Below are positions 4,658 to 41,320 of a stretch of 64,000 nucleotides of DNA, in pieces. The notes beneath the pieces were generated by a model. The model ran no database searches. It was not told where the DNA came from and was given only the letters and a program-made list of their open reading frames with translations. The stretch lies in assembly GCA_965649765.1 (NCBI GenBank), contig OZ287760.1, positions 17,546,001 to 17,610,000 on the forward strand. Reading direction: 5' to 3'. This stretch comes from Bispira polyomma (Eukaryota). Within the stretch, counting starts at the first letter, position 1. Each line of letters starts with the position of its first letter. The translations under genes and the position numbers were made by a program.

Positions 4658-4742
4658 TGTGTGTCTGTTTGTACCCTGTAGATCCGAATTTGTGGTTGTG
4701 GGCAACAAATTCGCGTCTTTTAGGGTTTCGAAAGGACATACC
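4658..4742 (+). ncRNA. mir-10: microRNA miR-10 precursor hairpin (mature 5p 4672-4694 UACCCUGUAGAUCCGAAUUUGUG; 3p arm ~4706-4729)
   Basis: Sequence matches the conserved bilaterian miR-10-5p as I recall it. The complementary 3p arm is CAAATTCGCGTCTTTTAGGGTTTC. Processing motifs are present: basal UG at 4658-4659 (-14), apical UGUG at 4691-4694, and CNNC (CGTC) at 4746, 17 nt after the predicted 3p end. It lies upstream of Hox4 on the same strand, the canonical miR-10 position. Confidence 0.97.
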
Positions 4743-27499: not shown

Positions 27500-28620
27500 A
27501 ACAGATGTGAAATATTATTTAGTTTCAAATACTGATATGTCTTTTGATGGCAATAATATTTTTCTTGGCATATGGTTTAAATTTGTTCCTTAAAATGTGC
27601 AAAATCTATGCAACAAATTACAAAAATAATGCGATAACAAGCGTGTGCTGAATATGCTTTCAACAATTTCTGTATTTGTATTGCAAGAAATAAACATTAT
27701 AAATAGACACTTCCTTGGATTGTTTAAATATTTATTGAATATGTTAGATAACAAGTTGTGTTTATGTATTTCATATGTACTTTTATTTCTAACCAATCAA
27801 GTTTGTCCAAATATGATTACATCATTATCTTTTTATAAGATGTCATATAATTGGTCAGTATGAAGTTCCTTAGGCTTAAGATTATATATTATTGTAAAAT
27901 AGGCTTCTTGGTCTGATGAAGATAATATTCTTCAATTTGTAAAGTTGGTGATATTTAATGTTCTTTCAACTTATACAGATGTAAATATGTAATGTTCTTT
28001 TCAACTTGTAAAACTGTAAAATATTTGATGCAGTAAGTTCTTTTTTGACTTTCCATTTGCTAGAAAAGTTATTATGTTTGTTTCAGTGATTTGAAAATGT
28101 GCAAATTTGTGTTTTTTTGTTATTGATTGCAAATTCTTAGCACGAATACTCTTTACATAGTCCCTGATGCCTCCTCTTTGTACCTTTATAAATGATCCAT
28201 ATTTTTATTCTGTAGCCATATCAACCTCTTCAAATCTCTGTCTCCAGCTTATATAAATGCCATGGTAGAAAGTCCAATTTGGTAGAATTTCAAATTATGT
28301 TTATTCTAGGAATATAAAAATCAAATTGTATTTTATATTACTGACTCAATACTCTTTTTATCAAAAATAAGATCACTTTGTCAAAGTATCTTATATTTTA
28401 CTGACGAAGAAATTATTGATATTGTAAAAATACTGGAAATCATGTTGTTTTCCACAGTTTAAATATGATAAGATAGTTGATGCAATTGTTGCCAATATAT
28501 ACTCTGTAAAAGTTTGTTATACCCCATAACATCTTGAAACAACATTAATTACTCAAAGTATCTTTTAGTATATGGCAATGTACTGCATTTTGTAAAACAA
28601 TAAAACATGAATCACAAGTT
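27500..28620 (-). mobile_element. possible highly decayed LINE (L2/CR1-group) reverse-transcriptase remnant
   Basis: Minus-strand frame fragments (DKLDWLEIKV; HKHNLLSNIFNKYLNNPRKCL) loosely resemble C-terminal L2/Crack ORF2 motifs. There are many stops and frameshifts. Confidence 0.25.
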
Positions 28621-29080
28621 GGGTTTTCTGTTTATTTCTTAAAATTTTCTAATTGGACTTTCTACCGGTAGAATTGAAAATCTATTCTGCCAGATTAGGC
28701 TTTTTACCATAACATCGAACCCACCCAATTCCACACCCTTGTTTTAAAAACTGTTACACTTTTAAATACTTATTTTAATGTTATAACTGTAATTGGGGTT
28801 ATTGTCCCTTTATTCTCCCATAGTAAAATTTAGTTCTTGTTTTGACAATACTAATTGTATTAATACTATACCAAACTTAATACTATGTTTTCATTGTGTA
28901 TATATCATTATTTATCTTTCACTGCCCTACATCACAAAGTAGGGGCGACTGATATAGAAATATATAGAAACCACCCTTGTTCCTTTTACCATTTCTATAC
29001 TATACTCTTGTGAACTATGCACCCAACAAACTGCTTGTGTTTGTGTACACACAGATCCAAGAACAAGGGCTTGTTGTAAT

Positions 29081-29180
29081 TTTCGTGGTGATAAACCTTG
29101 TGAAAAAGGATTTGTCTTTGGCACTGAAATAAAGGTGGGAAACAGACAAACCCGGATCCACAGGGTTTTACACCGCGAAT
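29081..29180 (-). ncRNA. second miR-10-family precursor hairpin, antisense to Hox4 (predicted mature 29167-29146 AACCCUGUGGAUCCGGGUUUGU)
   Basis: The reverse complement of 29146-29167 has the miR-10 seed ACCCUGU and 18/22 identity to the miR-10 at 4672. Arm 29093-29117 pairs with 29144-29168 around a ~26 nt loop. A lower stem pairs 29082-29090 with 29171-29179. CNNC (CAAC) lies 16 nt after the predicted 3p end on the minus strand. Confidence 0.8.
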
Positions 29181-29212
29181 AGTCCTTGCTTTACTGTATA
29201 AATCACGTCACT

Positions 29213-32633: not shown

Positions 32634-34180
32634 TTGTCAGACTAAACCACAAACGTTTAGAATGATGATACTGACCTGACTATACACACACGCGCGTTTC
32701 TTCTCTCTGGTTGTGTGTATAATTAGGTAGGGGGTCAATGCCATGAGTATAGAGAGTGGATGGCTAGATGGCAGACTGAGTGAGAGGCTGTGTGTGTGTG
32801 CCTTGCAGTCATCCATCATGCCCACTAGAGGTTATGAACTCGGGCTTGTCAGAGTCATTGCTGACTACAACTTTATTGCATTACTACACGACACCCCATG
32901 TCTGTTTGTCAAGGGAAAGAAACTCTATCCATATAGCAGAACAGCTCCAGCAGCCAATGTGTTTTGTGGTGGTTATTTTTTGGTAGCAGCAAAGTGATAC
33001 CTTCAATCCCTAATCAAGTATGAGTCACTTTAAAGTACTTTTTACCGTTGAGTTGAATATAGCCATAAAAAGTCATGCTTCAATCTATCAAAAAGGGCAC
33101 TGGATATTTGTAATTCTGAACTAATGAATAGAATACCCAGATATTTGTATACAATAAAAGAAAATAAATTGTTCTATGAACTATCTCCAACTACAAATAT
33201 ATAAGAATCCCCCGAAATGATCCTAGGGGTGCTGTTTATGTAGGGAAGGGTGTTTATAGAAAAGGGTTAAAAGAAAGCAGATATGGTTTTCAAAGGTGGA
33301 CATTGCAGGCACTGGTGGTCTTTGCAGAGGTGGCCTCCCTAACACAGTGTTGGCTATTGTAATCAGTGTACATAGGTTAATGTAAACATTTAAGAAGTAA
33401 TAGGCTCTCTCTATATATGACAAGGGACACTTAATGATTACAATTACAATGTGTATAATAATAGTCCTATTAATTTTACGCATATGCTGTTTATTACTGC
33501 CACACAGAGGTTGACATAGACAACACATATGCATAGAATATCTTGCATTACCTGCAAGATCATTGCAAATCTTGCTGCACCAGTGAAAGCTTTAGTGGGG
33601 ACATGGAGACTCCCTGTATTGTCTTTTATAGCTAAGTTGACCTGTCTCTTGCCACAACATCAGCAGTAGTATGTGTACAAAGTGGCACATTTCCATATAG
33701 ATGAAGAATTCCTGGATCCAATAAACTACTCTCCAATGGATACTCTGCTCATACTTATACTCAACCCTCAATATCTGGATTCTCTATCAACATATATCTG
33801 AAATCTGACTTTGTATTTGAATTCACTGTTGAAAGGTCTATTGAAATGAATGGTGATGAGAATAGGTTATAATTTCCATGTATACATGTATTTAACACAT
33901 GATTTGAGTCGATTTGAGTATGAGTTTTGCAGCATAAGTATATTTAGAGAATACCAGCCCTGGCCTAACTCACACTGTAATGAAGTCACTCCATCATATG
34001 GTCCCTGTGAGAGGGAGTGGTCATCTATCAAGTGGCCACTGGTCCTTGTGTGTGTAGTGACACACAGACAAACAGCCATACAGAGACACACATAATCACA
34101 CTACAGCCTGTGTAGCCACATGGACACTGAGGTATAATTATACACTATAACACTATAACGCTCAGCCACACATTCCTGAT

Positions 34181-34224
<44 letters not shown>

Positions 34225-35393
34225 CTGGGTCATCTAACATACACTTAGTGACACAAATAAGACATAAACATCAACTTACTTTCACTAAGGGGACAGCATG
34301 GTGCAAGTATACAATAAGTGTGTTGTGTGTTGATGTCTGGCTTTTGTTATGCTTGGCCTCATTTTGAGTTGCCACAGTACATTAGAATGTTACAAGAGAG
34401 ACATGGATGCAAGACATAATTTCCCAAAGGAAATGACAACATATTGGACGTTGGCCATTCTAGTTATAGAAAGGAACAGTCATTGCAATTTTAAATATGA
34501 CAATAGTATTAATGAATAAACAGTTACAGAACAGAGTTAGATGTGTCACAGCAAGGAAAAATGACTATTTAAATATCAATTTTGGCATAGAGAATGATAA
34601 AAGTTTGTTCCATACTTGTCATTCCTGTGCAGTTAGCCACACTTTTCTACTTAAATTGACAATGACAGAAAACAAACCCCCTTGCAGTTTTAGTTTAGGG
34701 TTTTTTTTTTCACTTTTATTTTTTTCTCAGGAAAGATATAAATGGTTTAAAAATTAGGGGGTTCCATGTAGGCAAGTCTCGAGAACCAAATCAGTGTCAA
34801 TGGGTAGATTATGGATCTAGACAGAGCACTAACTCCCTCAACAGTTCCCCAGTTACTGCTGAGGGAGGGAAGACATCCAGTATGGAGAGAGGGGGGTTAA
34901 ACCTCCCCCAAACACAGCCACCAATTGCAGCCTGATAGCCCCAAATTCCCTTATAGGGGGTGGGGTTAATCTTGGACGCAATTGAAAAGCCAGGGTCACT
35001 GTGAATTCTCATTTATCTCCAGAATTCCTTTCCAGTTTCTTCTTTTTTTTTTTTTGTCAATAAGTTACCTTGGATATTTTGTTTTGGCTTGATTTTTATA
35101 TAACGTATACATACTTTTTAATCGTCTATGAACGTAAAAGGGGACTTGTTTTTTTTCTATATATATAATTATATACACTGATAAGTATTTATATCTGTTA
35201 TGCCTGGTTAGTGAATGATACCTGTGTGATGCATTTAAGTCAGACTGCTTTTTTTTCTTTAAAAACCCAAGACTAATGGGGAAATTTTAAATATCTTTTT
35301 TTCATTGATTTTAGGTATCTTTTGCCCATACCTTTGTGTCATTCTGTTTGAATGAATTGAAAACACTTCAAAATAAGCATTGTTTAAAATCCA

Positions 35394-35455: not shown

Positions 35456-36684
35456 TAAAACTTTACAAAAGCTGTGGGAAACAAAATTTATCTAGATTTC
35501 TCTCTTTTTGCATTTATTTAAGGACGTTTTCTGACCAGCCTCTTACAATACCATAAATCACTTAATGTTGTTTGTCCACAAACCTCCCCCCCCCCTTTCT
35601 AAGTCTCCAGGATAGCTCCCTCCCATCCAAGCAATTTTTCATTATTAATATTATCAATTTGGAGTCCCACAACCCCATCACTTTTCTCCATCTAAAATAT
35701 ATAGGCACCCAGCACTATAATAGATCATTAGTTTTAGTTCTGTCAGAAATGAAGGGCAGGCCAATTCTAGCAGTTTTTGCTGGTGAAGGTCAGATATTGG
35801 TGTGTTGGGAAGACAGAAAAATCCTCTTGGACAGTTTATTGTCACATAACAGTAGGATTTCCTCTCTCCCTCTGACAAAGTCATTTCTGCCAGCACTCCA
35901 TTCTCTGGTGTTATCATTGTTTATGGGCAGGCAACTCGGCGTTGAAAATCCCATTAATAACAACCCCACCTCCATCCCTTTCTTTTAAAAACAAAAAAAA
36001 AACTAAATGAAAAAAATCCATATTTTATTAAGCTAAAAGCTCCCACTGTCAAATGGGGTATGGTGTGGGTGGTATTGTTTTATTGTGTTGTCCATCCACA
36101 TGGTGTGTGTGTGTGTGTATGTGTGAGTAGTGGGGTCATTTTTCATCCACTTTGGGGCACACAGTCCATTTATTTTATACACTATACTAGCTTTCTCTAT
36201 TTAGCCAGATTAGAAGGGGGGGGGGGGGGGGGGGTGTATTCACATTTTTGCTTTTTACTTTGAGAAATTGGTTTTCTCCCCCCTATTCCAACCCCAACTT
36301 TTAATCCACTCACAGACATACACACACATTGGGTGGAATTTATCATCATAATAAACCAAGTGAGTGCATCTATCTATAGGAGAACTCGTGGAGTGGCATA
36401 ATATGAACCCGCATCCACAAGACTTGCAGAAGAGGATCCTTCATAATACATAACCAATCTGTATTAAATATCTTCTATGTATATATACTTTTTTTGTTTC
36501 TCTTGCCTATAATAAATAATAATAAGTTGGCTTCACAGAAGAAGACAGCATCCCGAGTCTCAGCCTGTGTGTTTGTGTGTGTACAGTGTATATATTGAAG
36601 GAAAATAGAATATTGAGTGAGTGAGAGAGAGAGAAGCAGCCCGTGAGTGTGTGTGTGTGTGTTGGTGTTAAAAACAGCCTCCCC

Positions 36685-36900
36685 CAGTTTATAATAGGCA
36701 GCTGTCACTCCATGATTCATGTGCGCAGGTCAACGAGAACCATAAACATTGGCTCATTAAGATCACGTGATATGCAAATCTCGCCACTTGGGGAGGTCCC
36801 TCGCCAGGCAGGAGTTATAGCCTGCACTCGAGACGTGAGAAATGTTACTTTGGCTCGTGCTATAGCGCGGGTGTCAGCGTAAAAATTAATGGCCATGAGT
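36685..36900 (+). promoter_or_regulatory. Hox4 proximal promoter/5' leader motif cluster
   Basis: CTGTCA (Meis) 36702, TGATTCAT (Pbx-Hox-like) 36713, CCATAAA 36740, reverse CCAAT (ATTGG) 36748, TCATTAA 36754, E-box TCACGTGA 36763 and octamer ATGCAAAT 36772. AAATTAATGGCC spans the ATG. Confidence 0.7.
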
Positions 36901-40967: not shown

Positions 40968-41320
40968 CCAGCAACGGGTCATTTAACGGCGACAACAAGC
41001 GCACGCGTACGGCCTACACCCGACACCAGATCCTGGAGCTGGAGAAGGAGTTCCACTTTAATCGGTACCTGACGCGCCGGCGGCGGATCGAGATCGCCCA
41101 CACGCTCTGCCTGAGCGAGAGACAAATCAAAATCTGGTTTCAGAACCGGCGGATGAAGTGGAAGAAGGAGCACAAGCTGCCCAACACCAAAACGAGACTC
41201 ACCGACGTCAACATCACGTCCCACATGCAAGATGTCACAGACTTGTCGACCGCGTGCTCTCAGGGTTTACTGCCACACACAACGGACACGAACGGCCTAG
41301 TGGATGATATGCCCTTATGA
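40968..41320 (+). CDS. Hox4: Hox4/Deformed exon 2 with homeodomain (40994-41173)
   Basis: A polypyrimidine tract and TTTACAG acceptor end at 40967. The phase-1 join gives ...[82 protein letters not shown]...[14 protein letters not shown] and KLPNTK are PG4-diagnostic. The stop TGA is at 41318-41320, giving a 927-nt CDS (308 aa). Confidence 0.98.

What the first reader, a model, noticed from the sequence alone, without database searches (positions are those of the whole stretch)
29081..29180. Antisense miR-10 paralogue hidden between miR-10 and Hox4
Seen in sequence: a ~100-nt hairpin on the minus strand whose 5p arm, AACCCUGUGGAUCCGGGUUUGU, shares the miR-10 seed (ACCCUGU) and 18/22 positions with the canonical miR-10 at 4672. 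It has a lower stem of about 11-13 nt below the predicted cut, an apical UGU and a CNNC (CAAC) 16 nt downstream of the 3p end. Established: these are Microprocessor determinants, and miR-10 normally sits sense to and upstream of Hox4. Inference: an inverted duplicate of miR-10 with its own antisense transcription unit inside the Hox cluster, supplying the miR-10 seed in a different expression domain. Extra miR-10 paralogues are described in some lophotrochozoans and in amphioxus, so this may be a known paralogue. I cannot check that here.
Basis: partly seen in the sequence, partly recalled or inferred. Interest (0 to 1): 0.85.

Follow-up and report, generated by a model that had tools for sequence, protein, structure and literature searches.

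The report
Known annelid antisense miR-10 paralogue
A marine worm's Hox cluster carries a real extra copy of the microRNA miR-10, read backwards just upstream of Hox4; it is the counterpart of a copy already catalogued, with sequenced small RNAs, in the ragworm Platynereis, so it is a correct call but an ordinary one.

Summary
A 76-nt pre-miRNA lies on the minus strand at 29092-29167 (z -6.2), 7.7 kb upstream of Hox4. Its 5p arm carries the miR-10 seed and matches miR-10 at 18/22 positions (0.001 expected per window by chance). A second species (L047/L052) has it at the same place and strand: arms 43/44 identical, loop 50% diverged, CNNC kept at +16. All four stem substitutions keep pairing on the minus strand and break it on the plus strand.

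It is not new. Platynereis dumerilii has Pdu-Mir-10-P4-2 on the minus strand between Mir-10-P1 and Mir-10-P4 (miR-993), with 10,728 mature and 396 star reads. Its mature is 20/22 identical to this arm and its ends fall in the same register. It is probably MirGeneDB's Mir-10-P8 (inferred by elimination). Gene order and strands (P5+, P7+, P1+, this one -, P4-) match in both genomes. It is more likely a same-orientation duplicate of the already antisense miR-993 that went back to its 5p arm than an inversion of miR-10 (weak evidence). No RNA runs exist for this species. The scan had noted the same stretch (as a target site) and the P7 paralogue before.

The parts
29092..29167 (-). predicted pre-miRNA (76 nt), MIR-10 family, orthologue of Pdu-Mir-10-P4-2 (probable Mir-10-P8)
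   Evidence: fold z -4.1 alone, 2-nt 3' overhang at these ends; ends in register with the sequenced Platynereis precursor
29146..29167 (-). predicted mature 5p arm with miR-10 seed (positions 2-8)
   Evidence: 20/22 to Pdu-Mir-10-P4-2_5p (compared by eye); 21/22 to second species; 19/22 to own miR-993 5p arm, 18/22 to own miR-10
29114..29145 (-). apical loop, 32 nt, with UGU at its 5' junction
   Evidence: 16/32 identical and 3 nt shorter in second species
29092..29113 (-). predicted star 3p arm
   Evidence: 22/22 to second species; 15/22 ungapped to Platynereis star, sharing the C5-A16 mismatch and one compensatory pair (by eye)
29168..29179 (-). 5' side of lower (basal) stem
   Evidence: substitutions in second species become G-U pairs on this strand
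29082..29091 (-). 3' side of lower (basal) stem
29073..29076 (-). CNNC motif at +16 from the 3p end
   Evidence: kept at +16 in L047/L052 while the flank is 9/32 identical
29189..29211 (-). conserved non-coding block 22-44 nt 5' of the hairpin with a CRE/ATF-like core; possible promoter-proximal or processing element
   Evidence: 19/23 identical in second species; function not tested
4672..4729 (+). canonical miR-10 (Mir-10-P1) precursor, sense to Hox
   Evidence: mature identical to Platynereis and Eisenia P1
36889..37462 (+). Hox4/Dfd exon 1 (N-terminal EPKFPP motif, YPWM hexapeptide, GT donor)
40991..41320 (+). Hox4/Dfd exon 2 reading frame: homeodomain followed by LPNTK, to stop

Best explanation
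A functional, conserved microRNA gene of the MIR-10 family, orthologous to Platynereis Mir-10-P4-2 (probably Mir-10-P8 in MirGeneDB 3.0). A Pol II transcript running antisense to the Hox genes crosses 29167-29092 (inferred). Drosha/Pasha cuts about 11-13 bp above the stem base, helped by apical UGU and the +16 CNNC (inferred from motifs and from the orthologue's sequenced ends). Dicer removes the long loop. The 5p arm is loaded into Argonaute (shown for the orthologue: 27-fold more 5p than 3p reads) and represses mRNAs with miR-10-seed sites, overlapping the targets of miR-10-P1 and P7, with altered 3' supplementary pairing. It adds a smaller, separately transcribed dose of miR-10 seed (orthologue about 4% of P1 reads). 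It most likely arose by same-orientation duplication of the antisense miR-993/P4 locus followed by return to the 5p arm (about 60%), otherwise by inversion of P1.
For: Fold and chance statistics. Single copy in the genome and present unchanged in three DNA runs. Second species: same position 9.6-9.9 kb upstream of Hox4, same strand, arms 43/44, loop 16/32, flank 9/32, CNNC kept; 4 of 4 stem changes keep pairs on minus and break them on plus. Platynereis supplement: P4-2 on the minus strand between P1 (+) and P4-1 (-), 10,728 mature and 396 star reads, mature 20/22, A1 and G9 found in no other annelid paralogue listed. Same order and strands of P5, P7, P1, this locus and P4 in this genome and Platynereis. 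P4 is antisense to P1 in Capitella, Lingula, Drosophila and Tribolium.
Against: No small-RNA data for this species. The position of Hox4 relative to the Platynereis locus could not be read from held text. Loop twice as long as in Platynereis (32 vs 15 nt). No basal UG or mGHG. First base is G in the second species, unusual for a mature 5' end, so the cut could be shifted by one base in this clade. No seed site found downstream of the Hox4 or Hox5 stop in the DNA checked. Star-arm alignments among own paralogues do not separate a P1 from a P4 origin.
Confidence: 0.88

Rival explanations
1. An independent, lineage-specific duplicate that converged on the Platynereis P4-2 sequence and interval (genomic parallelism), so a new paralogue.
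For: Loop length and sequence differ from Platynereis; only three taxa compared; amphioxus independently evolved a paralogue with the same A1/G9 start.
Against: Same interval, same strand, 20/22 mature, 15/22 star in register with a shared mismatch and a compensatory pair; the published text treats five extra paralogues as primitive for pleistoannelids.
Confidence: 0.06
2. The conserved element works on the plus strand: as a near-perfect miR-10 target site in a sense transcript, or as a sense-strand hairpin (iab-4/iab-8-like two-way locus).
For: Plus strand folds at -41.6 here; in Platynereis the neighbouring P4-1 locus yields 251,577 reads from its opposite strand; an earlier scan note read it as a target site.
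Against: A target site would not keep the 3p arm 22/22 or the lower stem; in the second species the plus-strand fold falls to -27.9 (z -1.45) with four broken stem pairs while the minus strand keeps them; the orthologue's reads are on the minus strand.
Confidence: 0.04
3. A decaying pseudo-hairpin or a chance match without function.
For: Rfam score only 15.4 bits; 3x3 internal loop in the duplex; no reads here.
Against: Chance expectation 0.0013 per window; arms conserved against a diverged loop and flank; orthologue expressed.
Confidence: 0.02

Closest known systems
Pdu-Mir-10-P4-2 of Platynereis dumerilii (bioRxiv 10.1101/2024.06.21.600153, supplementary files; probably Mir-10-P8 of PMC12257675 and MirGeneDB 3.0)
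   Same: Minus strand, between Mir-10-P1 and Mir-10-P4 in the Hox cluster; 5p mature with miR-10 seed, A1 and G9; 20/22 mature, 15/22 star; same precursor ends.
   Different: Positions 13 and 18 of the mature; loop 32 nt instead of 15; no reads available here; the name P8 is my inference by elimination.
Mir-10-P4 (miR-993), protostome-wide
   Same: Antisense to Hox genes; 5p arm 19/22 identical to the candidate's, sharing G16-G17; own copy at G000:C13:17,686,821-897 between Hox4 and Hox3.
   Different: miR-993 uses its 3p arm and a different seed and lies downstream of Hox4; the candidate's 3p arm has lost the miR-993 seed.
Mir-10-P1 (canonical miR-10)
   Same: Seed; interval between Hox5 and Hox4; 18/22.
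   Different: Sense orientation; U1, A9, A16, A17; short loop.
Mir-10-P5, P6 (miR-1991), P7 of lophotrochozoans and annelids; amphioxus miR-10b/c
   Same: Extra Hox-embedded miR-10 copies; this genome has P5- and P7-like loci.
   Different: Sense orientation and more posterior positions; P5 and P6 are seed-shifted; the amphioxus copies are independent duplications.

Membership tests
Bona fide canonical miRNA (MirGeneDB criteria) | Hairpin with two 20-26-nt arms and at least 16 paired positions | tested here: met
   16 pairs in the 22/22 duplex (positions 1-4, 6-11, 15-20)
Bona fide canonical miRNA (MirGeneDB criteria) | Loop at least 8 nt and in the range known for the clade | tested here: met
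   32 nt; annelid precursors up to 137 nt are on record (PMC11701709)
Bona fide canonical miRNA (MirGeneDB criteria) | Reads from both arms with 2-nt offsets and a homogeneous 5' end | not testable with these tools
   No RNA run holds this locus; met by the Platynereis orthologue (10,728 and 396 reads)
Bona fide canonical miRNA (MirGeneDB criteria) | Arms conserved more than loop and flanks; structure-keeping changes | tested here: met
   43/44 arms, 16/32 loop, 9/32 flank; 4 of 4 stem changes keep pairs
Bona fide canonical miRNA (MirGeneDB criteria) | Processing motifs (optional): basal UG, mGHG/CmR, apical UGU(G), CNNC | tested here: inconclusive
   UGU and CNNC (+16, conserved) present; basal UG and CmR absent
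MIR-10 family | Mature-arm homology to miR-10 with seed | tested here: met
   18/22 to P1, 19/22 to P4 5p, 17/22 to P7
MIR-10 family | Rfam RF00104 gathering score | tested here: inconclusive
   15.4 of 47.5 bits, but the canonical miR-10 of this genome also fails (36.1 bits), so the model is insensitive here
Orthologue of Pdu-Mir-10-P4-2 / Mir-10-P8 | Same interval and strand among Hox-embedded miRNAs | tested here: met
   P5+, P7+, P1+, locus -, P4- in both genomes
Orthologue of Pdu-Mir-10-P4-2 / Mir-10-P8 | Closest match is P4-2 among annelid paralogues, in both arms | tested here: met
   20/22 mature and 15/22 ungapped star, above all own paralogues
Orthologue of Pdu-Mir-10-P4-2 / Mir-10-P8 | Lies upstream of Hox4 in Platynereis; MirGeneDB entry named P8 | not testable with these tools
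   Figure 5C and MirGeneDB are not held; supplements give no Hox coordinates
Mir-10-P4 (miR-993) proper | 3p mature with the miR-993 seed, between Hox4 and Hox3 | tested here: not met
   3p arm lacks that seed; the true P4 is a separate locus

The most novel reading that the evidence does not exclude
The locus works in both directions in this lineage, like iab-4/iab-8 or the Platynereis P4-1 locus: a sense transcript running towards Hox4 crosses it and is either cropped into a second small RNA or cut by the perfectly complementary antisense mature, giving direct cis control of a long Hox4 or pri-miR-10 transcript.
Probability: 0.06. Interest if true: 0.6.

Novelty: new member of a known kind. 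Interest (0 to 1): 0.2.

Why it matters
It adds two species to a paralogue so far documented, in text I could read, only from Platynereis, where the preprint table lists it as species-specific. That supports an older annelid origin and gives a phylogenetic marker. It is also a tidy case of a probable miR-993 duplicate returning to its 5p arm and regaining the miR-10 seed on an antisense transcript. It does not change what is known about Hox-embedded microRNAs.

Tried and rejected
Rfam at gathering level found nothing in the window; too insensitive for these hairpins. Full-text searches for the arm sequence found no main-text hit; the match was in supplementary tables. The only metagenome pattern hit (L048) has no hairpin and is a chance match. 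Hox4 loci of more distant animals (L049-L051 short; L053 with 10 kb upstream) show no miR-10-like arm; uninformative beyond 10 kb. A miR-1991/P6 pattern had no exact hit in the genome; not proof of loss. The sigma-70 scan does not apply to an animal. One search used a structure string that I mis-registered; it is disregarded and was redone. One search was a frame slip, a term slip. Hox4 was searched exon by exon; the joined model was left out.

Full report
Observation. The stretch 29081-29180 folds into one long hairpin at -37.7 kcal/mol, z -6.21, with none of 200 shuffles as stable. The 5p arm keeps seed positions 2-8 and differs from the canonical miR-10 at 4672 (+) at positions 1, 9, 16 and 17. 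A first-order Markov model of the window expects 0.0013 such matches per 64 kb. With ends at 29167 and 29092 the duplex has a 2-nt 3' overhang and 16 pairs, a 32-nt loop, UGU at positions 20 and 24, and CNNC at +16. Basal UG and the CmR/mGHG motif are absent. The locus is single-copy and is present unchanged in contigs of three DNA runs, all from one study. The plus strand folds slightly better in this genome (-41.6), so the strand needed an outside test.

Setting. The window lies in an intact Hox cluster with all homeoboxes on the plus strand. Parapeptides identify Lox2, Lox4, Lox5, Hox5, Hox3 and Hox1; two further homeoboxes fit Post2 and Hox2 by position only. The gene in the window is Hox4/Dfd (EPKFPP start motif, YPWM, homeodomain plus LPNTK). 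The Rfam mir-10 model finds four other MIR-10 hairpins in the cluster: P5-like (+, upstream of Lox4), P7-like (+, upstream of Lox5), P1 (+) and miR-993/P4 (-, between Hox4 and Hox3). The P7-like mature is identical to that of Platynereis, and P7 is annelid-specific, so the animal is very probably an annelid.

Second species. A search with Hox4 exon 1 gave a relative at 52% identity on two contigs of one ENA sample (L047, L052). Outside a few conserved blocks its intergenic DNA does not align, yet the hairpin is there, on the minus strand, 9.6-9.9 kb upstream of Hox4. Identity by part is 21/22 (5p), 22/22 (3p), 16/32 (loop) and 9/32 (downstream flank), with CNNC still at +16. Four substitutions fall in paired stem positions. 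All four become G-U pairs on the minus strand and mismatches on the plus strand; the fold is -36.5 on minus and -27.9 on plus. This is the pattern of a selected miRNA on the minus strand. It argues against a plus-strand target site, which would not conserve the other arm. The two contigs come from one sample and count as one comparison.

Known counterpart. The supplementary tables of the Platynereis genome preprint (10.1101/2024.06.21.600153) list Pdu-Mir-10-P4-2_5p at scaffold_27:3503211-3503270 on the minus strand, between Mir-10-P1 (+, 3,434,438) and Mir-10-P4-1 (-, 3,633,349), with 10,728 mature and 396 star reads. Compared by eye, its mature differs from this arm only at positions 13 and 18. 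A1 and G9 occur together in none of the other Platynereis or Eisenia paralogues listed. The star matches at 15/22 without gaps and in the same register, including a shared C-A mismatch at mature position 5 and a compensatory U-A to C-G change at position 18. The order and strands P5+, P7+, P1+, locus-, P4- are the same in both genomes. [quoted passage not shown] P4-2 is the only remaining Platynereis locus with that seed, so it is very probably P8. I could not see the figure or the database entry, and the held text does not give the position of Hox4 on that scaffold.

Origin. The arm is 19/22 to this genome's miR-993 5p arm and 18/22 to miR-10. It shares G16-G17 and the antisense orientation with miR-993, which is antisense to miR-10 in Capitella, Lingula, Drosophila and Tribolium as well. 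The Platynereis annotators favoured a P4 copy with an arm shift from 3p to 5p. Star arms in this genome do not separate the options. I put a P4 origin at about 60%.

Mechanism. Shown: structure, conservation pattern, strand, and expression and arm choice of the orthologue. From established knowledge of the canonical pathway: Drosha cropping, Dicer cleavage, Argonaute loading, seed-based repression. Inferred: a separate antisense transcription unit (it cannot come from the sense pri-miR-10), starting either near the conserved CRE-like block at 29189-29211 (19/23 in the second species) or as divergent transcription from the Hox4 promoter 7.5 kb away; targets shared with miR-10. In Platynereis it gives about 4% of the reads of P1, so it is a minor or spatially restricted source of the seed. 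No seed site was found after the Hox4 stop or in the 20 kb fetched downstream of Hox5. A distinct expression domain is untested.

Differences worth noting. The loop is about twice that of Platynereis (32 and 29 nt against 15), which is within the annelid range (PMC11701709). The first base is G in the second species, which leaves open a one-base shift of the cut.

Verdict. Real, well supported and already described in another annelid. New member of a known kind; interest 0.2. Hox4 was searched exon by exon and the joined model was left out.

Noticed in passing
window 29189-29211 (-): Conserved block with a CRE/ATF-like core just 5' of the hairpin, 19/23 identical in the second species; possible promoter element of the antisense unit.
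   Followed up: partly
window 32776-32905, 33686-33723, 33977-34045, 34751-35023, 35911-36041, 36692-36805: Conserved non-coding blocks upstream of Hox4 shared with L047 (73-97% identity; the 36692-36805 promoter block 93%).
   Followed up: no
window about 28260-28670: High-copy dispersed repeat (contig depth 100-200 times background in DNA runs) about 400 nt downstream of the hairpin on the minus strand.
   Followed up: no
G000:C13:17,311,000-17,419,000: No Antp/Hox7 homeobox hit between Lox4 and Lox5 in two genome searches; could be a loss or an intron-split homeobox. No Post1 was recognised next to Post2 either.
   Followed up: no
L045 (G000:C13:17,294,810) and L046 (G000:C13:17,386,858): Mir-10-P5-like and Mir-10-P7-like hairpins on the plus strand; the P7 mature is identical to that of Platynereis.
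   Followed up: yes
L043 (G000:C13:17,686,821-17,686,897, -): miR-993/Mir-10-P4 hairpin antisense to the cluster; its Platynereis counterpart gives far more reads from the opposite strand than from the conserved one.
   Followed up: partly
L041 (G000:C5:2,028,114-2,028,196): miR-100 (Mir-10-P2) hairpin; scores over the Rfam cut-off on both strands.
   Followed up: no
whole genome: No exact hit for a miR-1991/Mir-10-P6 pattern; the Platynereis paper reports P6 as lost there, though its preprint table lists a P6 with no star reads.
   Followed up: partly
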